Shown: positions 8,701 through 34,944, numbered from the whole stretch's first letter. The stretch: 63,430 nucleotides of DNA, filler included, from Perkinsus chesapeaki ATCC PRA-425 (GCA_013115145.1; 9 parts of 9 records of this genome joined end to end with filler, not necessarily neighbours in it), one strand, 5' to 3'. The notes: generated by a model not told the origin, from the letters alone. Program-made: numbers and translations.

Positions 8701-9408
8701 GTGGATGACCGTCAAGGAGGTCTTAACCGGTAGATGGTACCACTGTCAGTTTACGACCGGGTTGACCCTATTAAGGACCCACTGCAAGATGGAGAAAGTG
8801 TCAGGCTGCCAGCGTGAGTGCTGCGACTTCCATCTCGTCTGCTTGATTTTTTGACGCGGGTATGAGGATTAGCGCTGCGAAGTGAGTAGGGAACTACATT
8901 TTCAGCACTAAAGATCGGAGCGAGGGTGATTCTGGCGATGTGGGGAGGAGAGATCCTGACGGGAGCCTTCGCGCCTAAGAGTCATCCTTCAGAATTCACA
9001 TGAGGCGAGTATGAAGTTTATACTTTAAACCGAAAAAACAAGTATAGATCGTTGAACTGGAGTATTACATACAAGATCAATCCAATCACTTAACGTCGTC
9101 AAGCTCAAATGGAGCACTCAATAGCGTGTGTATGCGTGCGAGCTATGCACTGCGAAGATATGTCAAGCAATTTGCGAGAACCTGCGCCGTGTAGCGCGTC
9201 AGAGCAGTGCGAATCTTGACCGGTCAATCTTCACCCGGTCTTGCTGGAAAGATTTTCGAACCTCCCCAGACTCGTCCAAATGGCCATGCAAAAAAAGCAC
9301 GCCTTTCGGTCACGCACTCATGCGCATTATGGCTGTCACGGGATTCTAGGATCAAGGGTATCGGTGAAACAGGTTATTTCAAACAACCGGTATATAATTC
9401 CATTCTAA

Positions 9409-10428
9409 ATGCTTCAGCGCTGCTTCACTATCGGTTTCCTTGTCGGTTCAGCGGCGGCCATGAAATTTATGGATGGTGATGTTATCGGTGTGGATAATGG
9501 TTCCCCAGTGAACGACCCTCTCTACACCTATCAAGAAAAGTATTTCGAAGCTATTAATATCCCTGCAGCATGGAAGCGCCTTGGATCGGCCAAAACGAAG
9601 AGAAGTAGGGTTACTGTAGCTCTCATCGACACCGGTGTTGAGCCTGACCACCCTGACCTTGTCGGTAATCTCGTTGAAGGTTACAATGTTATAAAGCGCA
9701 GCACTGCGACTCCTGATAACGATGGGCACGGTACGAACATGGCTGGTGTTCTTGGTGCTACTATTAATAACTCTATGGGAATAGCTGGTGTCATGGACCT
9801 TGTTAATATCATGCCTATTTCGTTGGAAAGGCGTTTCAAGGGCGACGCCGAGGCAGCTTCTTTTGATTACGCAATTCGTAACAGAGAAGCAAGAAATATC
9901 AAGATAATCTTGATGGCTATTTCAGGGTATACCCTTTGGAAGGAGTTAGCTTACAAAGTCTTTGAGGCAGATAAGGCCGGGATGCTCATCATTGTCTCTG
10001 CTGGAAATAATGGCAAGAATATCACCGTAGAAAGAAAATATCCATGCGCCCTTACGACGAAGGTGAAGACAATGTTGTGTGTTGCAGGGACAGAACAATC
10101 AGAGATGAAGCTAGGATCCTTCTCTAACTTCGCGGATTATGTCGACATCGCTGCGCCTGGTGATGATATCACGACAACTGGGATCTCTAAAGGAGCTAAC
10201 CTTTATCCTTACGAGTCGATTGAAGGAGCTTCACCGGCGGCAGCAATCATTGCTGGCGTTGCTGCAATGCTCTACAGCGTTGCTCCAGGAATATCAGCTA
10301 CTGATATTAAGAAGATTCTCAAAGACACTTCCACGAAAGGTCTTAAGGACTCCTCTGGTGACAAAACTCTTCCATTCGGACGAGTTAATGCCGATAAGGC
10401 CGTGGCTGAGCTGCTTCCAAGATGGTGA
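9409..10428 (+). CDS. Secreted subtilisin-like serine protease (S8), copy 1, intronless
   Basis: Signal peptide MLQRCFTIGFLVGSAAA. Triad motifs VALIDTG, DGHGTNMAG, EGASPA; oxyanion Asn in SAGNNG. Confidence 0.93.
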   Translation: MLQRCFTIGFLVGSAAAMKFMDGDVIGVDNGSPVNDPLYTYQEKYFEAINIPAAWKRLGSAKTKRSRVTVALIDTGVEPDHPDLVGNLVEGYNVIKRSTATPDNDGHGTNMAGVLGATINNSMGIAGVMDLVNIMPISLERRFKGDAEAASFDYAIRNREARNIKIILMAISGYTLWKELAYKVFEADKAGMLIIVSAGNNGKNITVERKYPCALTTKVKTMLCVAGTEQSEMKLGSFSNFADYVDIAAPGDDITTTGISKGANLYPYESIEGASPAAAIIAGVAAMLYSVAPGISATDIKKILKDTSTKGLKDSSGDKTLPFGRVNADKAVAELLPRW

Positions 10429-18093: not shown

Positions 18094-18255
18094 TAATATA
18101 TAAATGTAATGAGGAAGTGGAGGCATAAAAATAATATATAAATGTAATGAGGAAGTGGAGGCATAACAATAATATATAAATGTAATGAGGAAGTGGAGGC
18201 ATGAACATAATATATAAATGTAATGAGGAAGTGGAGGCATGAACATAATATATAG
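18094..18255. repeat. 38-bp tandem repeat, about 4.3 copies, at contig end
   Basis: TAATATATAAATGTAATGAGGAAGTGGAGGCAT(G/A)A(A/C)(A/C)A at 18094, 18132, 18170, 18208, 18246. Confidence 0.93.
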
Positions 18256-18296
18256 AAGTATAATGAGGACTGACTGAACCATTTACAGAATCGAGT

Positions 18297-21961: not shown

Positions 21962-22940
21962 TGCCGAGAAAAACCCGACAACAGAAAATGGTTTTTCTTA
22001 TTTTGTAGACCAAGGAAAAAAGCACTCCCAGGATAACTTGTCACTCACTTGCAGATCCCTTCCGTAAACAAGCCAATAAAAGGGATCATCCAGATGCGAG
22101 GCGTTCGAACGGATAGGCTAAGATGCACCAGTCGAGGGCTGAAAACGAGAGTGTAGAGACCCTACATGGTTAGAGCTGTCCTGTGATGTAGAAAATAACA
22201 TCTAATCGACAATTACACCACCAACTGCCTGACTGAACTCAGAACCAATAATGTCTTGATAACACCAGTAGAATGGCACTCTAACTCGAGCTTTATCATA
22301 ATACAGAGCATACACAAACTATTACGCAGTGGACACTGTCAGTGTCCAACTGATGTAGGGTCTGAGCTCCTTACTCGGTAAAACTGATGAGCTGAAGGAT
22401 GCTTTTTGATGGTGATCTCTAGCTATGCGGTACGCAAAGACATGCGGGGATGAACAGAGGTTTCGACGCGAACGACACAGGTCGATGGCCACGCCTTCGG
22501 ACATCACATCGTGTTCTACATGAGGGTAGATACATCGCCCGCGGCCGGGAAGGAAGATGTCCGAAGCAGTGCTTCCTTTACACGGAGAGTGTTCGATGGT
22601 ATTTCACACATAGGAATAATAAGTGTGTACAACCGTTACAGTCTTATCCGTACTCATCAAGTAAGCAGAAGCTATAGAGTATCCTATCTAGAGTGGTTCA
22701 TACAAGTCGCAATGGTAGAGCATAACGCTGGGATTATATAAGATAATATCATAACAGGGCCGAAAAAGGAACCAATGCAACCTGCGTCACAGCGGAACGC
22801 GGACTGCTGAAGTGTCGAATACATCTCAGTCCAAGGTGATATCTATTGGATTATCCAATTCGGATACTAACCAATCAAAGCTCTCGAAAATCAAGAGTCG
22901 AGGTGCACTACTGCACTGAAGACACTTCACCTCCATTCAC

Positions 22941-23069
22941 CACATAGCTCGCTTGTTGAGCATGCGTGCCGATTGGCTACGTCACTTGCGTGTGCCCACC
23001 GATGATTTATCCCCCCCATTGCCGGTCTCGTCGCAGATAAGACTAAGTGGTTCTCTGGTACTCTCTCCT
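22941..23069 (+). promoter_or_regulatory. Conserved upstream block of secreted gene A (reverse CCAAT plus CRE-like motif)
   Basis: About 5 mismatches versus 26994-27122; contains GATTGG (22971) and TACGTCA (22978). Confidence 0.45.
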
Positions 23070-23795
23070 ATGGTAACAGCTATACCCATGGTTATCAAGC
23101 TAGTCTTGGTGGTACTACTACTAGGGGTACATGGCAGACCTATTCCGGCGAAGAGGCTCACCCCAAACTACTTTCATGATATAACACGGCAAAGTGGCTG
23201 CCCACTAGGCCCATATTGTATCCTTACCGCTAATGCTACTCGAGTCGAATCTCCAGCAGTAAGTTCTGTGCTGATTTTTCGAGAGGCTGCGAAACTTTCT
23301 GCTCCGTATTTGCTTTTCTACTTTACCACGTTCTACAACGAGAAAGATGAAATAATATCCACTACTGCCTACGCTGCAGGACAGATCACTCTTCATGAGG
23401 TCTACAAGTCCAAGGTAGGAGGGCTAGACTACAACGTCGCTCTGAGCCTAAATCTCCCCGATCCACCGGGTAAACCGAATGGCACTAACTTTTTCTTCTA
23501 TCCCATGATGTGGTCTGTCTCAGCTTGGAGGGAGTATTCTACTCATATTTTCTTTTACAATGGTACTTGGTTCCAAGACGATTCAAGAGTTGGTCTGATG
23601 CTAGAAGCTAACCCGAGCATACAAGACCATGGTCACAACTTCAGCTACTATGTTGCATGGTACATTGAGACAGGTCCGTGGCCTCCGGATGGAGGAGCCG
23701 ATCATCTATTCTATGCAGCTCTGACTTTCAGAGTAACCATGGATGGTATCGAGCAAGCGAACGTGCATCGAACATTCATCAGTGCTATTTTCTAG
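23070..23795 (+). CDS. Novel secreted beta-rich glycoprotein, paralogue A (intronless; ATG 23070 or 23088)
   Basis: Signal peptide MVIKLVLVVLLLGVHG, aromatic-rich strands, several N-x-S/T sites; homologous to 27123-27878. Confidence 0.8.
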   Translation: MVTAIPMVIKLVLVVLLLGVHGRPIPAKRLTPNYFHDITRQSGCPLGPYCILTANATRVESPAVSSVLIFREAAKLSAPYLLFYFTTFYNEKDEIISTTAYAAGQITLHEVYKSKVGGLDYNVALSLNLPDPPGKPNGTNFFFYPMMWSVSAWREYSTHIFFYNGTWFQDDSRVGLMLEANPSIQDHGHNFSYYVAWYIETGPWPPDGGADHLFYAALTFRVTMDGIEQANVHRTFISAIF

Positions 23796-23886
23796 ACCTA
23801 GGGCTGTTATCCGATGGCACAACTCCTGCCTGGCTGAAGCACACTGGTAAATCTGACGCCCGTGGTGTAGAACCACCTTCATGGTC

Positions 23887-24050
23887 AAACTATCAGACCC
23901 TATTCTCTTCGCTGTAGAACAGCTCCTATTATTCAACTATCAGACCCTGTTCTTTTCGCTGTAGAACAGCCCCTATTATTCAACTATCAGACCCTGTTCT
24001 TTTCGCTGTAGAACAGCCCCTATTATTCAACTATCAGACCCTGTTCTTTC
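23887..24050. repeat. 47-bp tandem repeat, about 3.5 copies, each with an internal hairpin
   Basis: Unit CAACTATCAGACCCTGTTCTTTTCGCTGTAGAACAGCCCCTATTATT at 23887, 23934, 23981, 24028; stem CTGTTCT/AGAACAG. Confidence 0.92.
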
Positions 24051-24719
24051 AGCTATGGGCCAGGTCTTTCAATATTAACCCTGCTATCTTTAGAGTAGTC
24101 TTAATCTTCATTACAATTTCCACAGAATAACAACATCAGTACTGCTCTGTGTCATACTTCATTGTGTTTGTTATACATTATAAGCATTATAACTAAGCGA
24201 GTAACAAGCAGCCGCGAACTTGGGTCAATAAGGCAGAGTTGAACCAGAGTCTCGTTACGAGACCCGTCGAATCTCCCAAATGCGCACACTAATACTAGAA
24301 AAGTAAATGGAATGCGATTTTAGTCTATTGCCTGGAGACACAACTATTATCCAACTTCGAACTAGAGCGCTGGTGAATCTCTATCCATTATTGAACGATG
24401 AACCCTTATTATTTCTGCTGAGGAACAGTACATATTTCCATTGCAATCTGTATGAATATCGATAACAGTGCTGGTCTTGTTATGATGAACTAACTAAACT
24501 ATTAGCCATAGATGATCAACGAACGGGAAGAAGCACCCTAACTGGTACGAAATCGTTCTAAGGGCCACTCTATCTTACTCGCAAACACTGGAACAATATC
24601 AAGCACCTCTCAACAACACTGGCACAATTCACTACTACTACTCCATAGAGAAAGTGATTTATAACTCCGCAACGTGGAGTCCACATTCATGGGTCAGCCT
24701 CAAATAGGCACCTTGCCGC

Positions 24720-25770
24720 TTATTTGCTCGATCCCGTCCGGCTCTCGGTTAGTCTTAGAGGCCATGCCGAACAGTTCTCGAGCTGATGTAATAAACTGAA
24801 ATGACAACTCATATTTCTATGTACCAAGGCAAAGTGGAGTAGCGAAAAGCCGCCTGTCGTGGTCAACACGTCAGTACTCGACCGCATATATCATTACTGG
24901 TGACACAGCGATGGGAATCCAATGAAATAGTCTCATTCTAACATTGCGCACAAGGCTGGCATTACACTCATTAAGATCGACGGACTTTCCTGGTCGCAGA
25001 TAATGCCATGTTTCCCCCGTCCGCATTGTCGCGCGACTTCCGGGAGCTGGTGCACGGACTGCTCACTGCTTCGCCCAATGCATGGATATCCTACGAATTA
25101 GAACCAGCCAGGTTTGAAGTCACTTTACTCTAGTAGTATCGCTCGACTCGACTAGCGATAAGCGCCTCACGATTCTTGCGCGACCCCAGCCAACAGCGTC
25201 TATAAGACATTGTGCAAACGACAGTCTAACATCAGTCTTACCATCTGCGGCACCAGGGCGGGTAGAATAAGATTGACGACTAAGTTGATGGTTTGGGAGG
25301 CACTCATCATTTTAAAAGGTCTGGAAGGACAGGGAAAAAGCAGGTGACTATGTTCATGAAATCCGTTCCTCGACCATCTGGAGGATTAACAACTAGTAGA
25401 GCCCATACTACATAAACTATATACCATCCACAACCTATAATGACAGCCTGGCTCGCAGACTCACAGTTTCCCATTCACAGATGGAGAAAACTAACATGGC
25501 TGTATAACTTCCGGATGCACACAGAAAGGAGGATGGCCGAAGTCTCATGTCCCACCTGATAAAGGGGCAACACAAGGACGTCGATGAAGCCAGTCTGACA
25601 TTTAGGTGTATTTACGTTGGTTCTGATATTGAATGCATCAAGTGTAGTGATGAGGTATAAGGCTGTTCACCTGTCATGCATTGGTGATAGAGGCATGCCC
25701 CTTTCCCTCTCCAAATCATCTTGTCGTGAAAACTCTTCCATCACACGTGGAGCCCAAAGAAGATAACACC
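24720..25770 (-). pseudogene. Partial duplicate of the 3' exons of the VSD-PDE gene
   Basis: Copies of the WAPRVMEEF..., KCQTGFIDV and ECLPN...RPGAA exons, with a +1 insertion near 25764, QGD changed to QDD and a frameshift near 25312. No 5' exons; homology stops near 25940. Confidence 0.8.
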
Positions 25771-27122
25771 TAGTAAGCTTGCGTCCCACACCCAGGCACA
25801 CTCGTTAACTTTGTAGAGAGTCCCAAAGATACTAGTAAGGCTATACTTCTAGGAATAGCCAGTTTACTGGTGTTCCTCAGAAATAGAGTGCCGCTATCTA
25901 TATACTAGCTCCCAGATGAGCGAGAGTCTCAAAAGTGTATCAGCCTGCATTAGGTTGTCCACTAAGGACATTTAGTCAGTCACAACGACTATTGGTTAAC
26001 ACGAAGGTAGATCAAAAGATAGACTTATAACAACGGAGCAGCTTCTTTGACGGAAGGTTGGACAGTACTGAACTGCTTCGCGGCCTAATCTACGCGGACT
26101 GCGGGGATCGTGCATTCTCCCACCCCCCGATGATAATGTGAAATGATGAAGAGTCGCGCGCCGCGGGTCGTGACATGCCATGCGTGACACATGATGTGTC
26201 GCACGCGTCCCTGGCGCGGCGCCTACGGGGCCGTCACCTTGGCCGTTGCAGGCCGGAAATTCAGGTGGTGAGTATCCTAATACTGGCCAGTAGCTCATGG
26301 TCTAGCGTTGAGATTCTGAAGATTTCGATAATCACAGTGTATCCGTAGTTCCTGTCTTGAAATATGCCTAATGCAGGCCGAGGAAGAAACCAATAAACCC
26401 AGGTGACAGTTGCTCCCGGTGGCACGCAGCACACATAAGTGCACAACTAAGGAGTGCCTCCCTTTCCCTTGCAAGGAAGATGCAACAGATTTTCTCTGGT
26501 CATGCCTTTTCTGGTGTGCGAGTATGAGCGGTTACATTAAAGCAATGTTGTTTGCGCTGTTGCACAAATACGCGCTGCGCACAAGTGTCTTTGTTAAAAC
26601 CGTTGAAAGATTCCCGTGCATGATATATAAACCAATTCGACCTAACTAATTGACCTATCTACTTTTTCTACTCTTTAACTTATGGCTCTTGAGTCGACCA
26701 GTGTCCCAGCCAAGGCTCTGAACAAATGTCTTCAAAGTATCATCAATGTGCGCTATTACGTCTTTAGTTGCAGACCGCCCCAGTGGAGCCTACAGACCCT
26801 GTGTCTGTGACGCACTCCGGATGCAGCACCGGTTTTGCTGTATAATAATATCATGACGGTTACTAGTGAGTGATGCCGTCCTCCAGTCATGGAAATGTAG
26901 AATACACTTCAGCCCAAGCAGACGGGTGTATCCAATGCCGACTCTCGAGAATGAAGAGTCGAGGCTCACTACTGAAGATACCCCTCCATTCATCACATAG
27001 CTCGCTTGTTGAGCATGCGTGCCGATTGGCTACGTCACTTGCGTGTGCCCACCGATGATTTATCCCCCCCATTGTCGGTCTCGTCGCAGATAAGACTAAT
27101 TGGTTCTCTGGTACTCATTCCG

Positions 27123-27878
27123 ATGGTAACAGCTATACCCATGGTTATCAAACTAGTCTCGGTGGTACTACTTCTGGGAATACAAAGCAGGCCTATTCCG
27201 GCTAGGAAGAAGCTCCCCGGAAACTACTTTAAAGATGTAACGAGAAATGAGACCGTACAAGGCCCTAGCGGGACCATCTACCGCATCTATACCGCTAATG
27301 CCATACATGTCGCTACTCCAGCAGTGAGTTCTGTCATCATTATTCAACAGAGTGAAGATCCGACGAGCCCACGTTTGCGTTTTTACCATACCACTTTCTA
27401 CAACGACAAACTCGAAAAGCTAAACACTACAGCCTATGCTGAGGGGGCAATCACTATTGACGAGGTCTACAAGTCTAAGGTAGGAGGGGAGGACTACCAC
27501 CTCACACAAGTCCTAAACCTCCCCGATCCACCGGGTGACCCAAATGGCACTAACATTTTCTCCTATCCCATGACGTGGTCGACCTCACCTTGGAGCACAC
27601 GTGGTCCTCACACCTCCTTCTACAACTCTACTTGGTACCAAGATGATTCAAGGGTTGGACTGATGTTAGAAGCTGACTATACCGTGCAAGACTTAGGCCA
27701 CAACTACAGCTACCATGTTGAGTGGAACATTATGACAGGTACGTGGCCCCCAAATGGGGGGCCTCCCAACGGCCATCTTTTCCATGTATCACTGGCTTTC
27801 AAGGCCACCAATGATGGTATTGAGCAAGCTGGCGACCCTCACAGAACTTTTGTCAATGAGATCTGGGCACACCCTTGA
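27123..27878 (+). CDS. Novel secreted beta-rich glycoprotein, paralogue B (intronless)
   Basis: Roughly 55% aa identity to A by eye; shared blocks EVYKSKVGG, LNLPDPPG.PNGTN, QDDSRVGLMLEA, DGIEQA..HRTF. Confidence 0.8.
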   Translation: MVTAIPMVIKLVSVVLLLGIQSRPIPARKKLPGNYFKDVTRNETVQGPSGTIYRIYTANAIHVATPAVSSVIIIQQSEDPTSPRLRFYHTTFYNDKLEKLNTTAYAEGAITIDEVYKSKVGGEDYHLTQVLNLPDPPGDPNGTNIFSYPMTWSTSPWSTRGPHTSFYNSTWYQDDSRVGLMLEADYTVQDLGHNYSYHVEWNIMTGTWPPNGGPPNGHLFHVSLAFKATNDGIEQAGDPHRTFVNEIWAHP

Positions 27879-28009
27879 ATATGTTAACAGAGGTCAACGC
27901 AGCCTCTGTTTATTCGCAAGGCGCTGGTGGATGATCCACCGTGGATCTGAAGCTTCAAGCTTCAGATCACAAGCTTCAAGCTTGTCTGTAGGCAGGTATC
28001 TCTGGTGTA

Positions 28010-28180
28010 AATCAGCTCCTATCATTTAACTATCACTACCATTCAATGGTAAACATTGTTTTCGCTGTGAAACAGCTCCTACTATTCAACTATCAAACGT
28101 TATTCTTTTCGCTGTAGAACAGCTCCTATTATTCAACTATCAGACTCTTTTCTTGTCGCTGTGGACCAGCTCTTATCACT
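28010..28180. repeat. Degenerate copies of the 47-bp repeat
   Basis: Variants of TTCAACTATCA...TTTTCGCTGTAGAACAGCTCCTATTA downstream of paralogue B. Confidence 0.7.
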
Positions 28181-28534
28181 CAACAATCAAACTATGCCTT
28201 ATTCAGAGTAGCGTTGTTCCTCGTTACGCTTTCTACAGAATAACAATATTAGTACTGCTCTCAGAGCAGTGCTCTGTCTTATATTTTATTGTGTTTGTTA
28301 AACACCAGTATTATAAGAACTAAGAGCGGTAGAGAACCGGGCATGAATACCAGCTTTAATAGCGAGAATCGAACCAAACGTGACGAGCCTCCAAACTGTT
28401 GAGAACACTAGCACAATTCAGAAAAGCTAGCCGATACAGATGGTCAGAAGTTGACATGTCAAGATAACGCATAACACTACATCCACGGGGGGTTAGTTAT
28501 ATAGGCATCTCCTCGCTCATTTCCTGAGACCTAC

Positions 28535-31500
28535 CCGACTCTTGCCTGACCCTCGATGCTATGCCGAATAACCCTCGAGCTGTAGTCATCAACTGAAATG
28601 ACTCATATCTGCACCTCATAAACCTTTTATATGAGAATGAAATAGGTCAACGTAGAGCTATCCAATATGACTGAATTAACCGTCGGCCGTCTTCAATGGA
28701 TACAAGGCGCCAAGCCACATGTTTCATAGTTGCGGAGGGAACAGTGTGAATGCGTGAGATGCCGCCACACTGTGCCGAAGTTACACTCACCTTCATTAGA
28801 GATTGGCTGACTTTCCTGCTCACAGATGAAACGTCGTTCTCCCTCTCCGGATTATCGCGCGACTTCGGAGAACCGCTGTCCGGGCTTGTTACAATTTCGC
28901 CCAGCGCCTAAACATCGCACGAGGTGGAATTTGCCAGGTCTCAAATCACTTGACTTTAGTGGTGTTGCCAGACTTGAGCAACGACAGGCGCCTCACAATG
29001 CTGGCGCGTCCTCCACCAGCCACGTCTATACAGAGAGTTATGAATACTGCAGGAAGGATGCCTTACCAACTGCGGCACCAGGGCGCGTAGCATAATATTG
29101 ACGACTGAGTTGAAGGTTCGGGAGGCACTCGCCATTGATTAGGTCTGGCATGATTTGAGAAAGAACCTACTTACGGGAGTTGAACGACTCGTGCAATACA
29201 AATAGACCCTGTCTGCTACTGTCAGAGTTCGAGTTAAACAATTGAACTGGACATTGCCCGACAATTGCAAGGTATAATCGGATTCTAATTTCATTCTACC
29301 ATATAGGTTCATAAGTTGCGAGATTGTGACATTTCTTGACATCTTTCGTTAGCTCATCCGGCTTTTTAGAAGCGGGATGCACTCAAAAGAAGGGACAACG
29401 GTGTGTGCATGTCCCACCTGATAGAGGGGTAACACAAGGACGTCGATGAAGCCAGTCTGACATTTAGGTGTATTTACGTTGGTTCTGATATTGAATGTAT
29501 TAAGTGTAGTGATAAGGTATAAGGCTGTTCACCTGTCATGCATTGGTGATAGAGGCATGCCCCTTTCCCTCTCCAAATCACCTTGTCGTGAAAACTCTTC
29601 CATCACACGTGGAGCCCAAAGAAGATAACACCTAGTAAGCTTGCGTCCCACACCCAGGCACACTCGTTAACTTTGTAGAGAGTCCCAAAGATACTAGTAA
29701 GGCTATACTTCTAGGAGTAGTCAGCTAAGTGGTGTTCCTCAAGAATGGAGTACCGCTATGTATATCATAACTCTTAAATGAGTAGAAATCTCAAAAGTGT
29801 ATCATCCAGCCATTTCATCAAAGCCACTTTGCAAGCTCGGTGCTGGAAATTGAACTACAGCGGGTTTTTACAACCCACATATAGAGGATTTCGAAAGATT
29901 CACTCCCAAACATACTGCAAGAGCCTTACATACTCGATATCACGTGATGGATTGGATAGATCAGCAGCGTGCAGGAGTATGTTAAGCAGCAGCTGACGAT
30001 CGGATAGGTCACTCTTATGGCCTGTCAATGATTCCTGAAACTCGAGTAGGCGAACCCACCTGGAAAACTAGACGAGCAGTTCTTGAGTTTCGCTCGGAGC
30101 TCTGATAGAGTCGTGAAGTGATTCTGGTTATCCGTCATCAAAACCATCTCAATTATCATCTTCCGCGACAACGCCCAGTCTTCCTACAAGCAGCTGTGCG
30201 CTGGATATGAGTAATAACAGCACGGTAAAATGCTCGCGCTGCCGTGATACCGTTGTGTAGGAAGCCAAGAGCTATTCGAAGTGCTTCGTACCTCCGAGTA
30301 GCCTGTGAGAGGATTAACAGGCATCTTATTAAGCAGCGTAAAGACAGATGCCACATGATGGTTCTCTAGAATCTGAGGGGCGAATCTCAGGTTCGATCCC
30401 GGGGTTCGGCATTTCTCACTGAATTGTCGCTATATCTTATCGCTATAGGGTGATGGCTACTAGTGAGGAATCCATTGTCAACACCCGGGTGCTGGTAGTC
30501 GTGTATCTGTACCAGAGCTCCGCCGGATTATCAAGCGGGAAAGATTTACTGCAGCCGCCAGTAGACCGGCTTGAACCTCCTGGGCCGAGAAGAGTTGAGG
30601 TGATGCTGAACCGAGCTGGATGCACCTGGCATGCTATGCTCTAACTAGCGTAAAAGTTCGAACCAAACCGATTTGTGATTCGACGAGGCATGCTAACTTA
30701 CACTAAAAAAGTAAGCATGGCTTGCATAACATCAACAGAGTGCATGGAGTTATGGTATGGATTCCTTGGAAGGTACCCTTTCTCGACCTTACGTAGGAAT
30801 TCCGCCGTAGCCACCAAATCTAGTTTCACTGACAGCAGAGTGTTCATTCTCGAGTACACGGTGTCCTGGCTTCGTATATCGAGACAAAGTATGATACATT
30901 GAAGTTTTTATGCTGTAGTTAAACATAATGCTTCCGGTAGATGCCACTCATTGGAAGTGCGCTGTGGTTTCTCAGCGCTTCCCTATGTGGACAGGAGGGA
31001 TTATCACCGTAATTCGCCCTGTCAATCGGGGTAAGTAACGTGTGTAATAGAAGTTGTGCGTTAGCGAACCGACAAGGCTCACCGCTCCTGTCCGAGACCA
31101 CATGCTGCTTATAATTCCTCGGGCTCTCTGATGGCAACAATTGCCCCACTGGACCATAGTCGTCTCCGAAGGCAGACACAACAGAGAAGAAGTACATCCC
31201 CGCGCAAGATAGAAGAGGAAGCTCGGATAGGTCACTGAAGGGAGAGGCATGCATAGTAGGCAATAGTATGCAAGCCTGGAGCTACAGCACCTATCGTCAA
31301 AGAATCCTAAGGCAGCGTTTTTGTTGAAGGTTCTGTAGAGGGTTCCGGTCATCACATCATGGCCTAGTGAGGTCAGCCTTGCGGTCAAAGCCGGATTGGA
31401 TGTTGTTGTTCCCCCACCAGTGATCGAGCCACGAATCCTACCGAACACCCCTAGAGTTGGCAATCCTGTGGCAAGTTAGCTACGATCGTCGGGCTCCAGA

Positions 31501-34500
31501 CGCGACCACGTTCAGAACAGAGCCTCTTCGATTCTGCGCTGCCTTAGGAGAGGCAAGGACCTCAGCTGGGCTCTTAAGCCGTGGGTCAAGCTCCGGAGCG
31601 TAGCTCGCATCGTAGGCTTCAGGGTCGGGAATATTATTGGGATGGCCGAGAAGGTACTGACTTCATAGTGATACTCAGTAAGGTGGTAGACAGCCTCACC
31701 CGGAGTGTGAAGATGTTGAACGACCACATGGTAGCTGATTTGGCGAGATATCCGATAACTCGTGTGGCGCCTGGGTCCAAATTTATACGATTAATTTGAC
31801 CGTTATCCGGATGGTCCGTAATAAGTTCACTTCCAGCCAATATACTCCCCAATAGATTTGCAGTTCGAGTTTGGGAATGGGAAGCCTGAATACGAAGAAG
31901 TGTCTTCGGTTTCCGGGGGAGGCATAATTTAATAGTGCTGAGCTTTTATGTTGAATACTTTTTTATAGATGGCTCGAATCATACAACAGAGTTTCAATAT
32001 TGTCAGGGACACATAACATCCCATCGCTCAGTAGCAGTTAAGGTACCTTGGAGGCGTTCTCAGCATTAGTGTCCGCCAGAGACGCTGCTCGCTTTTTCGC
32101 CAGGAAATTTTCTAACTCGTCATCGCGCCAAGTCTTAGTACTCGTTTTAGCGGTCGCACTGAGCGCGCACACTATGGATGCTAGGCCTTCATCGAAGGAC
32201 CTACCTGGCCAGAGCCAACCAATCGTTTATTTCAGACCTTATAGCGCCCAACTCATCGTCGCCATCTTCATCAGTCCCTCCTTTTCCGGCGCTAACTGAT
32301 ATCGTATATAATTTATTCGTCGATATGATTTCGGATGCCCAATCCATTTTCTCCCGCATCGCAGCGGAGACTCCTTTGGATTCTTTAACTTCTCGTAATA
32401 TATCGACAACCCTGTCAACTCGCGAACTGAACTGTAGAGCTGTGCTGTCACCTGAACAAGTCAGGACCGGATGTGCTCCACATGAGCACATTGCTTTAGA
32501 CCGGTGTTTAGAAGTCTGCCGCTAACCGACTCCCAGGCAAACCCGCTTCTCGAAGTTCATGCGCTGAGTACTCACTGCACATCGGCTGCCTTGTATTGAA
32601 AATACGACAATCGAGCGGAATTCAGAGGGAATATGTCCGACATAGGATTTTGCCGACTACGGGCGAAGGCAATCTGGTTGGTACTATATGCATAGATTCT
32701 GGGAATTACTTAGACTGTACGAGCTATAAGTTAAGTATGAATTTGAAGCCACGAATTGTATCGAGAAACGGTTTGCCGTAAATGCATACTGTATGCATAA
32801 TGTAAAATATACCTATCCTATATGTGTGGGTGACGTTCACAGTTACAATCAGTGTTAAATCTCCGATACGACAAATCTTACTTTGTTGTCCACCACGTGC
32901 CTTTTTCTTGCTGCCGGCCTTACGTAGAGCAAGAACAAGACGGAGCAAACGGAACAGCCTCAGGATGGTGAAAGACTGGGCATCCCCCGGTGCTGCTATC
33001 TATAAAATTTTGCCGTGCGCATGCGTGCAAATGCGACAGCAACTCACCTTAGCCACACAAGATCCCACCACAATAACGAAATCAAACAAGTTCCATCGGT
33101 CGTAAAGATACCATAACCCTTCTGCGCTGAACAGGTACTTATAGTGCTCGGCTAAGTAGAGAGATCCCACATAAGGCGTAAAACAATCTCCAACAAAAAC
33201 AATCCTAGAAAGACAGTGTCGATCGCCTCGAAGACATTGTTAACTCCGGCGCTAACATAGTCCTCAATACCTAATACGTATGGCATATGATAACGCTGAA
33301 GGGGTTGTTAAGTTACCGAGCGAAGACAGGATGAAAAGGGCGTAGACTCCGACAAGACTATAGACAAAATATTCAAAGCCTTGGGATTCAACAACGAGAA
33401 TCGTCAAGCTACGGAGTAGCTGCCAAGGGCCTGGGGGGCACACTTCAGATAGTTTCCCGGGATGATTGAATCTCACTGAGCTCCTCTTTCCCTTTACCAT
33501 CGTCACTCTCGCCATCGGCATCGGAAAGCCTCCGGTAGTCAGCAGCTTGAACTTTACCGAGCTGTCGTAGCAGGACGAACCTCGAAGCACTGTGGTAATC
33601 TTTAGAGGGTCATGCTCACCAAATTAGAGCTTGCGATGCAATGTTGCGAGGTTGGTCTAATAGGAATACAATTAACCAGGATACGAGGAACGAATAAGGC
33701 CGCCCGTATCTGGGGAAGCGGCTGCTTGTTAGAATGGGTTGCCGATGATACTTTATAATATAGTAAAGTACTCTGGAGACGATCAAGACTAGTGCGATAA
33801 CGGCAGTGAGAAGCAGCCATTGGATAGTGCATTTCCTCGAGGCTGCCACTACGGCAGAGTCAGACAGGTCGTCTTCGGCGGTCACTGATCGGGATCGGTT
33901 GTCACCAAGCACGATCATCCTGAACAAGGCATTCACACTAACCTATGGACGGTAAAAGGACCCACAGTAGTAGCAAGTCAAGTATGAACTGCACAGGTGC
34001 ACTGTACAGTATCGCGAGAAAGATGCGCCCCCATGGAATACAGATCGCACCGGTGTCTTGATGGCCACCGCTGTAGCATATCTGTAAACATTCGTGATAA
34101 CCCATCTAGAGAGCTTCATGGATCACTTCATCACTGAACGACTCCGTCTCGCAATCATCCTGCGGATCAACACAGAGCAAGTCGTCCTCTTCTAAGTCGA
34201 TCTCCTGGTCTGAGCAGTATGGTCTTGAGTCACCACTTGAACTGTATAATGCCATAGTGAGCTGCTCTCCGACGCTGAGGAGGGAGCTGGAGTTCAGCTG
34301 CGCCTGTAACAGTTGTATTTCATTAGATATACTTCCTTGCCGCACTTCTATCTCATCCTGGTTGAGCGTGCTTGACAGATCGAGTGCGATTGACTGTGCT
34401 GCATCGTAGCCCTTTCCTTTACATGCGGGAAAGCACAAGCTGGTCCTACCAAAGGTCAGAAATACGCCTTCCTCAGCCAGTCCAAGCAGTGAACAGAACC

Positions 34501-34534
34501 CCGTGTTCAAAAGGGATAGCCGCATTGTCCTCAC
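28535..34534 (-). CDS. Multipass membrane protein: extra TM module + voltage-sensor domain (S1-S4) + class I cyclic nucleotide phosphodiesterase (both ends approximate)
   Basis: VSD exons 33317-33430 (S1), 33171-33270 (S2, F-L-L-E), 33048-33126 (S3, WNLFDFVIVVGS), 32882-32999 (S4, ILRLFRLLRLV). PDE exons WSFNIFTL, NPYHNSMHSVDV, AAA|IHDYQHPG, ILENHH, MVLMTD, HAADLSNP, WAPRVMEEFSRQGD (29533-29631), KCQTGFIDVLVLPLY (29418-29484). Intron phases are consistent in my reconstruction. Confidence 0.88.
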
Positions 34535-34713
34535 TTAGGAAGTCTGCCATCCCACAGCCTGGTGGTGCTTATCTCGGACAGGCTGTTGAAGGCTGGGACA
34601 CTTGGACCACAGAAATTCTCGAAGACGGTCGATGTCGCCGTGAGCGACCCCGTTGGTTTCTTGTAGACAAACAAAGATGTGTACGTGTTTTGGCCAAAAG
34701 TAATATCCTAAGT

Positions 34714-34944
34714 GAAGACTGGTTATAACGCCAGCGGTCCAGAAGACTGTTTATAACGACAGCGGTCCAGAAGAGTGGTTATAACGACAGCGGCCAGAAG
34801 ACTGGTTATAACGATAGCGGTCCAGAAGACTGGTTATAACGCCAGCGGTCCAGAAGACTGGTTATAACGACAGCGGTCCAGAAGACTGGTTATAACGCCA
34901 GCGGTCCAGAAGACTGGTTATAACGACAGCGGTCCAGAAGACTG
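34714..34944. repeat. 28-bp tandem repeat, about 8 copies, at contig end
   Basis: GAAGACTGGTTATAACG(A/C)CAGCGGTCCA. Confidence 0.95.

What the first reader, a model, noticed from the sequence alone, without database searches (positions are those of the whole stretch)
29418..33430. Voltage-sensor domain fused directly to a cyclic-nucleotide phosphodiesterase (candidate voltage-sensing PDE)
Seen: splicing gives S1 GFEYFVYSLVGVYALFIL, S2 FEAIDTVFLGLFLLEIVLRL (F-x-x-E), S3 GLWYLYDRWNLFDFVIVVGS and S4 FTILRLFRLLRLVLALRK (RxxRxxR). A basic linker (KAGSKKKAR) and helical segment (SSRVDRVVDIL...ISTNKLY) follow. Then comes a PDE with all catalytic motifs: YHNSMH, HD, ENHH, TD, ADLSNP, EEF..QGD and the invariant Gln in KCQTGF. 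There is no S5-pore-S6. S1 lacks the Hv1 Asp and S4 lacks the Hv1 Trp. Known: a poreless sensor driving an enzyme is the design of voltage-sensing phosphatases, and a light-sensor/PDE fusion exists in choanoflagellates. Inference: membrane potential directly controls cAMP/cGMP breakdown, linking ion or salinity changes to motility or differentiation; it could also be an engineering tool. Similar domain pairs may already be auto-annotated in ciliates and other alveolates. I know of no functional demonstration but cannot check the literature.
Basis: partly seen in the sequence, partly recalled or inferred. Interest (0 to 1): 0.93.

Follow-up and report, generated by a model that had tools for sequence, protein, structure and literature searches.

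The report
Voltage-sensor domain fused to phosphodiesterase
A Perkinsus-like parasite gene joins the voltage-sensing part of an ion channel, without any pore, to a complete cAMP/cGMP-degrading enzyme; relatives exist in other protists, but no paper I could search describes it, so it may be an untested way for membrane voltage to control a second messenger.

Summary
On the minus strand a 25-exon model (24 GT-AG introns, 28-430 nt) gives one open frame of at least 1082 aa. It contains a canonical S1-S4 voltage sensor, no S5-pore-S6, a conserved helical linker and a class I PDE that keeps all 17 invariant catalytic-domain residues.

A syntenic Perkinsus marinus locus has the same exons. Every intron phase that could be compared there is conserved. 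Synonymous sites are saturated, dN is about 0.2, and a 21-residue S4 stretch is identical. That assembly hid the architecture behind a 100-N gap and a contig end.

The same design occurs on a 5'-complete, intronless metatranscriptome contig (P0039), in at least six more proteins, and in a 248-member ESM Atlas cluster that is mostly ciliate.

- The start is probably not MPMARV. Conserved upstream exons (Cys-rich part plus three or four TM helices) probably belong to the gene, and its 5' end is cut by the piece edge.
- The fusion is not "direct": about 390 aa separate S4 from the YHN catalytic motif.
- The gene ends near 29296, not 29418.

No RNA evidence exists for this locus. Voltage control of the enzyme is inferred. 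No paper in the searched library describes a voltage-sensing PDE.

The parts
33477..34707 (-). Probable N-terminal extension, in six exons: 34707-34535, 34445-34127, 34081-33966, 33937-33752, 33709-33620, 33580-33477. It has a Cys-rich hydrophilic part, three or four hydrophobic helices and an acidic spacer. The 5' end is missing: the first exon starts at an acceptor, and upstream lie only a 28-nt tandem repeat and the piece edge.
   Evidence: tblastx blocks are 51-74% identical to P. marinus L001 5738-6972. Splice phases are the same in both species. Hydropathy peaks lie at residues 176-214, 246-264 and about 270-300. No Pfam or Atlas match. The join to S1 is not proven, because many ORF-preserving GT-AG paths exist.
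32882..33430 (-). Voltage-sensor domain in four exons: S1 33430-33317, S2 33270-33171, S3 33126-33048, S4 32999-32882. S4 carries R-x-x-R-x-x-R, then R and K at the fifth and sixth positions, followed by a basic juxtamembrane stretch (KAGSKKKAR).
   Evidence: Pfam Ion_trans hits on the S2 and S3 pieces. HMM of other family members: 93 bits. BLAST to the P0039 VSD plus linker: E 2e-15. Exon lengths are identical to P. marinus (114/100/79/118 nt), 69% aa identity, dN 0.20, pS 0.88. A family profile that includes these exons hits Cav1.2 VSD-I, Ci-VSP and Hv1 in the PDB.
31700..32451 (-). Cytoplasmic linker in three exons: 32451-32205, 32158-32047, 31885-31700. It holds the family-wide helical module (VDRVVDILREV ... 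MDWASEIISTNKLY), an acidic/Gly stretch, and the start of the PDE fold (WSFNIFTL).
   Evidence: The module is conserved in P0039, P0047, P0061 and P0062. It is 69% identical to P. marinus with dN 0.22. In the AF2 model of P0039 it forms helices 257-271 and 278-289, after an S4 helix (213-253) that runs on past the membrane segment.
31083..31656 (-). Perkinsus-specific inserts inside the N-terminal part of the PDE fold, in three exons: 31656-31484, 31437-31291, 31234-31083. They include the conserved PLL..MYFFSVVSAFG helix.
   Evidence: The blocks are 42-68% identical to P. marinus 9311-10090 with the same intron phases. The inserts are absent from P0039.
29296..30828 (-). PDE catalytic core in nine exons: 30828-30702, 30625-30550, 30506-30420, 30372-30292, 30183-30060, 30021-29934, 29631-29533, 29484-29400, 29361-29296 (TAG stop).
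   Evidence: Colinear PDEase_I pieces. A PDE-core HMM covers positions 3-240 at 260 bits. Identity to P0039 is 40%, E 1e-54. All 17 invariant columns of a 69-sequence PDE alignment are kept, and the invariant Gln is present. The C-terminal splice (38-nt intron) was chosen because it restores the consensus P..P..N...W spacing.

Best explanation
One gene of a Perkinsus-like alveolate encodes a membrane protein in which a canonical, poreless S1-S4 voltage-sensor domain is joined to an intact class I cyclic-nucleotide phosphodiesterase. The join is a basic juxtamembrane segment followed by a conserved two-helix module.

Most likely mechanism (inferred): a change in membrane potential moves the S4 arginines through the S2/S3 charge-transfer centre. 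The motion passes down the S4 helix, which in the model of a relative continues into the cytoplasm, to the linker module. That module then changes access to, or the geometry of, the PDE active site, so cAMP and/or cGMP breakdown becomes voltage dependent. This is the Ci-VSP design with a different enzyme.

Shown here: the domain order, the intactness of both domains, purifying selection, and the existence of a family with this architecture. Inferred: that the exons form a single mRNA at this locus, voltage dependence, polarity, substrate and physiological role.

In Perkinsus the protein probably (about 70%) also carries an N-terminal Cys-rich segment and three or four extra TM helices of unknown function.
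For: Gene model:
- 25 exons with 24 GT-AG introns give one ORF of at least 1082 aa.
- A syntenic P. marinus locus has the same exons, and every intron phase that could be compared is the same.

Voltage sensor:
- The VSD exons have identical lengths in both species. Synonymous sites are saturated (pS 0.88) while dN is 0.20. The S4 stretch SFTILRLFRLLRLVLALRKAG is identical.
- The hallmarks are present: S2 Asp, Phe and Glu with the D-x9-E and F-x-x-E spacing; S3 Asp; S4 R1-R3 plus R5/K6.

No pore:
- Relatives match Ion_trans only at profile positions 3-121 of 241.
- There is no hydrophobic segment after S4.

PDE:
- All invariant residues are kept.

Family:
- P0039 is a 5'-complete ORF on an intronless metatranscriptome contig, with an in-frame stop upstream of its start. 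It carries Ion_trans plus PDEase_I and aligns to the window model over both the VSD-linker part (E 2e-15) and the PDE (E 1e-54).
- Further members are P0047, P0061, P0062, P0030, P0075 and P0048.
- An ESM Atlas cluster of 248 members carries PF00233 in 100% and PF00520 in 73%.

Structure:
- In the AF2 model of P0039 the S4 helix continues into the cytoplasm and the PDE superposes on PDE4 at TM 0.93-0.96.
Against: - No transcript evidence exists for this locus. No listed RNA run holds it and nothing could be laid on it.
- No functional data exist for any member of the family.
- About 390 aa, including disordered stretches and lineage-specific inserts, separate S4 from the catalytic core. Tight mechanical coupling is therefore less obvious than in VSP.
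- The number of S4 charges varies in the family from about 2 to 5. Some relatives (P0030, P0047) have weak sensors, so the domain may have other roles.
- The linker module also occurs in related PDEs that lack a VSD (P0049, P0045, P0046). It is therefore a general PDE regulatory element, not a voltage-specific one.
- The PDE tree neither requires nor excludes a single origin of the fusion.
Confidence: 0.6

Rival explanations
1. The S1-S4 domain serves only as a membrane anchor, targeting signal (for example to flagella) or oligomerisation module. The PDE is regulated by other means, such as phosphorylation, Ca2+, or the N-terminal ectodomain. Voltage does not control catalysis.
For: - Many alveolate PDEs carry N-terminal TM helices of unknown role (PMC10865986).
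- The linker is long and partly disordered.
- Family members vary in S4 charge number.
- The linker module is shared with PDEs that lack a VSD.
Against: A mere anchor would not need the full charge-transfer centre and an arginine ladder. Yet the S4 stretch is identical between two species whose synonymous sites are saturated. The acidic and aromatic partners are conserved across most of the aligned, distant family members.
Confidence: 0.22
2. The VSD itself conducts ions, as a proton or omega-type cation pathway like Hv1. The protein would then be a channel-enzyme in which ion flux or local pH, rather than S4 motion, sets PDE activity.
For: - VSDs can conduct (review PMC10651576).
- The family profile matches Hv1 in the PDB at E 4e-14.
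Against: - S1 has no Asp at the Hv1 selectivity position, and S4 lacks the R-x-W-R-x-x-R tryptophan (sequence).
- The hydrophobic plug Phe in S2 and R1-R3 are intact. This is the non-conducting configuration.
- The best PDB matches are Cav and Nav sensors, not Hv1.
Confidence: 0.06
3. Two neighbouring genes or transcripts: a VSD-only protein, and a separate PDE starting at a Met in the linker. The continuous ORF would be an artefact of my splice choices.
For: - The P. marinus annotation calls no gene over the VSD and two separate PDE fragments.
- No RNA evidence exists.
- ORF-preserving GT-AG paths are easy to find in short spacers.
Against: - The P. marinus split is explained by a 100-N gap inside the linker exon and by the contig end.
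- The S4-to-linker and linker-to-PDE junctions have the same phases in both species.
- The linker exon is homologous to the linker of proteins that are single ORFs on transcript contigs.
Confidence: 0.05
4. The upstream conserved exons (34707-33477) are a separate gene. The VSD-PDE protein would then start just before S1, as the reader assumed (MPMARV, ATG at 33521), like the short N-termini of other family members.
For: - P0039 is 5'-complete with only about 75 hydrophilic residues before S1, and P0062 has almost none.
- The window has an in-frame ATG by read-through.
- 58 and 102 alternative ORF-preserving splice paths exist in the two species, so the join is not forced.
Against: - In P. marinus, read-through has a stop four codons before GPWQLL, and the only in-frame ATG needs the 46-nt intron.
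- That 46-nt, phase-1 intron is present at the same place in the window, where the exon before it has no ATG.
- The spacer between the upstream stop and the ATG would be only about 95 nt. In P. marinus the two genes would overlap.
Confidence: 0.28

Closest known systems
Voltage-sensing phosphatase (Ci-VSP / TPTE family)
   Same: A poreless S1-S4 sensor sits N-terminal to a cytoplasmic enzyme on one chain. A basic segment follows S4 directly. The family VSD profile matches the Ci-VSP sensor structure 4g7v at E 3e-14.
   Different: The enzyme is a class I cyclic-nucleotide PDE, not a PTEN-like phosphoinositide phosphatase. The linker is hundreds of residues long with its own conserved helical module, instead of roughly 16 residues (own knowledge). 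The sensor is closer to Cav/Nav sensors than to VSP.
Alveolate and stramenopile VSD/ion-channel-cyclase fusions (Paramecium, Plasmodium and Tetrahymena adenylyl cyclase, Weber et al. 2004; Phytophthora PPTG_13136 and PPTG_13761)
   Same: The same lineages fuse an S4-type sensor to a cyclic-nucleotide enzyme. This would be the degradative counterpart.
   Different: Those proteins make cNMP through a cyclase homology domain, and the ciliate and Plasmodium ones keep a K+ pore. Here the enzyme degrades cNMP and there is no pore.
Uncharacterised VSD-PDE proteins in databases (P0039, P0047, P0061, P0062, P0030, P0075; ESM Atlas cluster 'Phosphodiesterase' with PF00233 plus PF00520, mostly Ciliophora)
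   Same: Same domain order and same linker motif (..W..I.IISsNKLY.P). The PDE domains are homologous at about 40% identity.
   Different: The Perkinsus protein has two inserts in the PDE N-terminal region and probably an extra N-terminal Cys-rich segment plus three or four TM helices.
Rhodopsin-phosphodiesterase (Rh-PDE) of choanoflagellates
   Different: The sensor there is a light-driven rhodopsin, not an S4 voltage sensor. Not compared with tools here.
Sperm Na+/H+ exchanger SLC9C1 (sNHE) and Hv1
   Same: Both are non-channel or pore-less uses of a VSD.
   Different: sNHE couples the VSD to a transporter. Hv1 conducts protons through the VSD itself. The Hv1 S1 Asp and S4 Trp are absent here.
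Mammalian PDE1, PDE4 and PDE7 catalytic domains
   Same: Same fold and metal-binding residues. The model of the relative P0039 superposes on PDE4 at TM 0.93-0.96 and rmsd about 1.5 A. One exon matches PDE7A and PDE1B best by sequence.
   Different: No CaM-binding, UCR, GAF or PAS regulatory domain. The regulatory region is a VSD plus a new helical module.

Membership tests
S1-S4 voltage-sensor domain (N-terminal half of Pfam PF00520 Ion_trans) | Four transmembrane helices in S1-S4 order, recognisable by profile | tested here: met
   Pfam pieces hit profile positions 21-55 and 54-82. Family HMM built without the window: 93 bits, E 8e-25. Hydropathy peaks lie at S1-S3. PDB profile hits to Cav, Nav, VSP and Hv1 sensors.
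S1-S4 voltage-sensor domain (N-terminal half of Pfam PF00520 Ion_trans) | S4 with basic residues at every third position | tested here: met
   ILRLFRLLRLVLALRK gives R1, R2, R3, Leu at the R4 position, then R5 and K6. The stretch is identical in P. marinus.
S1-S4 voltage-sensor domain (N-terminal half of Pfam PF00520 Ion_trans) | Charge-transfer centre: S2 aromatic plus two acidic residues, and an S3 Asp | tested here: met
   S2 reads D-TVFLGLF-LL-E, with Asp 10 residues before Glu and Phe 3 before Glu. S3 reads NLFDF. The same columns are conserved in P0039, P0047, P0061 and P0062.
S1-S4 voltage-sensor domain (N-terminal half of Pfam PF00520 Ion_trans) | Gating charge movement in response to voltage | not testable with these tools
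   Needs electrophysiology.
Voltage-gated cation channel (full PF00520) | S5-P-loop-S6 pore after S4 | tested here: not met
   No hydrophobic segment between S4 and the PDE fold. Relatives match Ion_trans only at positions 3-121 of 241. The S4-linker intron is only 202 nt in P. marinus and holds no conserved block.
Class I cyclic-nucleotide phosphodiesterase (PF00233 PDEase_I) | Full-length colinear match to the catalytic-domain profile | tested here: met
   Exon pieces cover profile positions 1-168 in order. A PDE-core HMM covers positions 3-240 at 260 bits on the spliced model.
Class I cyclic-nucleotide phosphodiesterase (PF00233 PDEase_I) | Metal-binding and catalytic His/Asp/Glu residues (HNxxH, HD, E of ENHH, TD..H, D of ADxSN) and the invariant Gln | tested here: met
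   All 17 invariant columns of alignment A1 are identical in the model. Gln is present in KCQTGF.
Class I cyclic-nucleotide phosphodiesterase (PF00233 PDEase_I) | Hydrolysis of cAMP and/or cGMP | not testable with these tools
   Needs an enzyme assay. Substrate preference cannot be read from the sequence.
VSD-PDE family (P0039-like, uncharacterised) | VSD, linker module and PDE on one polypeptide in that order | tested here: met
   Continuous spliced ORF. Intron phases conserved with P. marinus. BLAST to P0039 over both parts. Caveat: no RNA evidence for this locus.
VSD-PDE family (P0039-like, uncharacterised) | Conserved linker module (V.kVl.lL ... W..i.iIssNkLY) | tested here: met
   VDRVVDILREV...MDWASEIISTNKLY aligns with the module in four relatives.
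Voltage-sensing phosphatase (VSP) | PTEN-like phosphatase and C2 domain after the VSD | tested here: not met
   Pfam finds only PDEase_I downstream of S4.
Hv1 voltage-gated proton channel | Asp in S1 (selectivity filter) and the R-x-W-R-x-x-R motif in S4 | tested here: not met
   S1 (GFEYFVYSLVGVYALFILSSL) has no Asp, and S4 has no Trp. The positions of the Hv1 residues are from own knowledge.
Alveolate ion-channel/adenylyl-cyclase fusion | Cyclase homology domain, and a K+ pore in the ciliate and Plasmodium forms | tested here: not met
   No cyclase domain in any Pfam scan. No pore.

The most novel reading that the evidence does not exclude
This is a member of a so-far undescribed class of voltage-regulated enzymes: a voltage-gated cyclic-nucleotide phosphodiesterase that turns membrane potential directly into cAMP/cGMP breakdown. 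It would be the degradative partner of the channel-cyclase fusions of alveolates. In Perkinsus it would additionally be combined with an extracellular Cys-rich domain and extra TM helices, so that one protein integrates an external cue and voltage.
Probability: 0.45. Interest if true: 0.85.

Novelty: new variant of a known kind. Interest (0 to 1): 0.72.

Why it matters
Only a handful of proteins use an S4 voltage sensor for anything other than gating a pore: VSP, Hv1, sNHE and the protist channel-cyclases. [quoted passage not shown] Four full-text phrase searches for a voltage-sensing, voltage-gated or voltage-dependent PDE found nothing relevant.

If voltage does control this enzyme, three things follow:
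- It would be a second, independent example of the VSP principle.
- It would give alveolates a direct electrical switch for cyclic-nucleotide levels, which matter for ciliary and flagellar beating and for stage transitions in parasites.
- It would offer a compact genetically encoded tool to lower cAMP/cGMP by depolarisation or hyperpolarisation.

The family is already present in databases but only as automatic annotation. One paper read the two domains in Euplotes as neighbouring genes. The value here is in pointing to a testable, well-conserved member and in correcting its gene model. The P. marinus reference annotation misses the architecture because of an assembly gap.

Tried and rejected
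- RNA evidence: the only runs offered (two small 2015 runs with the same species label) hold none of the stretch, and nothing could be laid.
- ESM Atlas gave nothing for the linker exon or for the N-terminal TM piece.
- The word-indexed protein search found only P0039 itself, both for the whole protein and for its VSD region. Only the search restricted to its PDE region gave relatives.
- My first hand model was wrong in three places. A start at MPMARV, an exon 'QHVVSDRSGEPCRF..LLLHT' and an exon start at 'QDTVYSRMN' were all dropped after comparison with P. marinus.
- A read-through C-terminus ending ..LLKSRMS was replaced by a 38-nt intron model that restores the PDE consensus spacing. This last choice remains unverified.
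- The PDE-domain tree is too poorly resolved at depth to say whether the fusion arose once.
- Foldseek of the whole P0039 model returned only PDE catalytic domains. The apparent longer matches to long-form PDE4B have rmsd 13-16 A, so I do not read them as UCR2 homology.
- Pfam finds nothing in the N-terminal extension in either species.

Full report
**What is in the sequence**

The piece is eukaryotic DNA of about 47% G+C. It carries a many-exon gene on the minus strand.
- S1, S2, S3 and S4, followed by a basic stretch.
- A helical segment ending in ..ISTNKLY.
- The PDE motifs YHNSMH, HDYQHPG, LENHH, MTDNQNH, AADLSNP, EEFSRQGD and KCQTGF.

Single exon pieces already hit Pfam Ion_trans (profile positions 21-55 and 54-82) and PDEase_I (five colinear pieces).

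**Gene model**

I built the model by hand and then corrected it against a relative. It has 25 exons and 24 introns. All introns are GT-AG, 28-430 nt long, and most are 38-48 nt. The model gives one open reading frame of at least 1082 aa ending at a TAG at 29296.

**The relative that anchors the model**

An exhaustive search with one PDE exon returned no identical protein. It did return a 164-aa fragment with 69% identity (P0002, accessions EER11838.1 / XP_002780043.1). That fragment lies on GG676258.1 of assembly GCA_000006405.1, which is the Perkinsus marinus genome (PMC11474014).

tblastx of the window against that locus (L001) is colinear over the whole gene. Exons are 42-86% identical at the amino-acid level and introns are diverged. 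The window therefore comes from a fairly distant relative of P. marinus.

The four VSD exons have exactly the same lengths in both species (114, 100, 79 and 118 nt). Intron phases are the same at every junction where a matching intron could be picked out in P. marinus. Two junctions could not be compared fully. One is interrupted by an assembly gap. At the other (N2), P. marinus has an intron that the window may lack.

Over the sensor, synonymous sites are saturated (pS 0.88) while dN is 0.20. The 21-residue stretch SFTILRLFRLLRLVLALRKAG is identical. That is strong purifying selection on the sensor, and it speaks against a decaying channel remnant.

The P. marinus annotation does not show the architecture. 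It calls no gene over the VSD and two PDE fragments. The reason is technical: a 100-N gap sits inside the linker exon, and the contig ends after the LENHH exon.

**The sensor**

The spliced S1-S4 region has the full voltage-sensing apparatus:
- In S2, an Asp lies ten residues before a Glu, and a Phe lies three residues before that Glu (the charge-transfer centre).
- In S3, the NLFDF Asp is present.
- In S4, R-x-x-R-x-x-R is followed by Leu at the fourth position and then Arg-Lys.

An HMM built only from four other proteins of the family scores the window's VSD plus linker at 93 bits. A family profile that includes the window's exons hits solved sensors. Cav1.2 VSD-I is best (62 bits for one domain). 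Nav sensors and bacterial Nav channels follow, then Ci-VSP (E 3e-14) and Hv1 (E 4e-14).

There is no pore:
- Nothing hydrophobic lies between S4 and the PDE fold.
- The relatives match Ion_trans only at profile positions 3-121 of 241.
- The intron after S4 is 202 nt in P. marinus and holds no conserved block.

**The enzyme**

The PDE core aligns to a 69-sequence PDE alignment with all 17 invariant columns identical. These include the His/Asp metal ligands. The invariant Gln is present.

Perkinsus has two lineage-specific inserts in the N-terminal helices of the fold. One of about 110 aa follows WSFNIFTL, and one of about 30 aa precedes VKLDL. Both are conserved in P. marinus.

The last splice (a 38-nt intron) was chosen because it restores the consensus P-x10-P-x12-N-x3-W/Y spacing. 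It is unverified.

**The architecture elsewhere**

P0039 (744 aa) carries Pfam Ion_trans (E 3e-11) and PDEase_I. It comes from a 2484-nt intronless contig of run ERR1711871, which I take to be a marine metatranscriptome (own knowledge). It has an in-frame stop upstream of its start, so it is 5'-complete. It aligns to the window model over the VSD and linker (E 2e-15) and over the PDE (E 1e-54).

Searching with its PDE region found P0047, P0061 and P0062 with both Pfam domains. My own HMM added P0030, P0075 and the truncated P0048.

All of them share a module between S4 and the PDE. It consists of a helix V.kVl.lL and, about 20 residues later, W..i.iIssNkLY.P. Weaker copies of this module occur in related PDEs without a VSD (P0049, P0045, P0046). 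It therefore looks like a general regulatory element of this PDE clade onto which different sensors are grafted.

The ESM Atlas holds a cluster of 248 'Phosphodiesterase' proteins, with PF00233 in 100% and PF00520 in 73% of members, mostly from ciliates.

An AlphaFold model of P0039 (mean pLDDT 76.8) shows four sensor helices. The S4 helix (213-253) runs on into the cytoplasm. Two linker helices follow, then a PDE domain that superposes on PDE4 at rmsd about 1.5 A.

Six conserved exons lie upstream of S1 (34707-33477). They encode a Cys-rich hydrophilic stretch, three or four hydrophobic helices and an acidic spacer.

In both species a 46-nt, phase-1 intron sits directly before PWQLL. A 39- or 40-nt intron after ..ALIW/ALLW regenerates the Trp codon.

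Arguments that these exons belong to the same gene:
- In the window, the exon between the two introns has no ATG.
- In P. marinus, read-through upstream of S1 hits a stop four codons before GPWQLL.
- A separate VSD-PDE gene would therefore need a different start structure in each species, with a spacer of about 95 nt or overlapping genes.

Arguments against:
- 58 and 102 ORF-preserving GT-AG paths exist across this spacer in the two species, so the mere existence of a path proves little.
- Other family members have short N-termini.

I put the extension at about 70%. Its first exon begins at an acceptor, and upstream there is only a 28-nt tandem repeat and the piece edge. If the extension is real, the 5' end of the gene is missing from the window. 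It has no Pfam or Atlas match.

**Mechanism**

Shown:
- Domain order.
- Intact sensor and intact active site.
- Purifying selection.
- A conserved linker.
- A family that extends at least to ciliates.

Inferred:
- S4 movement is transmitted through the continuing S4 helix and the linker module to the catalytic domain.
- cNMP hydrolysis thereby becomes voltage dependent.
- Polarity, substrate and physiological role are all unknown.

The main rival is a sensor used only as an anchor or targeting device. It is weakened by the conservation of the arginine ladder and its countercharges, but it is not excluded.

No RNA run holds the locus, so the single mRNA at this locus rests on comparative evidence.

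**Literature**

Full-text phrase searches for a voltage-sensing, voltage-sensitive, voltage-gated, voltage-dependent or voltage-activated phosphodiesterase, and for related terms, gave no relevant paper.

A 2023 review with a figure of all the VSD-containing proteins reported until then never mentions a phosphodiesterase (PMC10651576). A 2025 VSD review likewise has none.

A Euplotes genome paper noticed PDEase_I next to Ion_trans and read it as synteny of two genes (PMC8670190). VSD-cyclase fusions are known in the same lineages.

The library lacks most subscription journals, so a description elsewhere cannot be excluded.

**Verdict**

- The architecture is a conserved but functionally unstudied family.

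Noticed in passing
window 22930-25311 and 26983-29136: A tandem segmental duplication with a period of about 4.06 kb. Each copy carries an intronless ORF of about 280-290 aa on the + strand (22953-23795 and 27006-27878). The two ORFs are 64% identical and have a signal-peptide-like hydrophobic N-terminus and no Pfam match. Each is followed by a 47-nt tandem repeat array (23808-24086 and 28008-28239). The second copy ends just downstream of the PDE gene's 3' end.
   Followed up: partly
window 34714-34944 and 18094-18269: Both ends of the piece are tandem repeat arrays: 28-nt unit x 8.3 copies and 38-nt unit x 4.6 copies. Such repeats probably broke the assembly. The first one cuts off the 5' part of the gene studied here.
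   Followed up: no
L001 8312-8411 and the L001 end (P. marinus GG676258.1): A 100-N assembly gap lies inside the linker exon, and the contig ends after the LENHH exon. These explain why the P. marinus reference annotation has no VSD-PDE gene. It has only two PDE fragments (183 aa and 164 aa) and nothing called over the sensor.
   Followed up: yes
window 33965-33938 and L001 6473-6500: A 28-nt GT-AG intron lies at the same position and phase in both species, and several others are 38-48 nt. Introns in this lineage can be extremely short. Generic gene finders may miss them.
   Followed up: partly
L001 4224-5624: In P. marinus, further open frames upstream of the first shared exon look coding. 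They include a 162-aa frame with hydrophobic and Cys-rich stretches. The N-terminal extension, if real, may therefore be much larger than the part visible in the window.
   Followed up: no
P0049, P0045, P0046, P0082, P0076, P0073 (relatives, not in the window): The linker module (..W..I..I.s.n.LY) also occurs in related protist PDEs that have no voltage sensor. Some of these have other N-terminal regions, and P0045 has several TM helices. The module may be a general sensor-to-PDE coupler.
   Followed up: partly
window 34368-34327: A 42-nt GT-AG segment inside exon N2 is in frame and could be either retained or spliced. P. marinus has a 141-nt intron at about this place. The two readings differ by 14 aa.
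   Followed up: no
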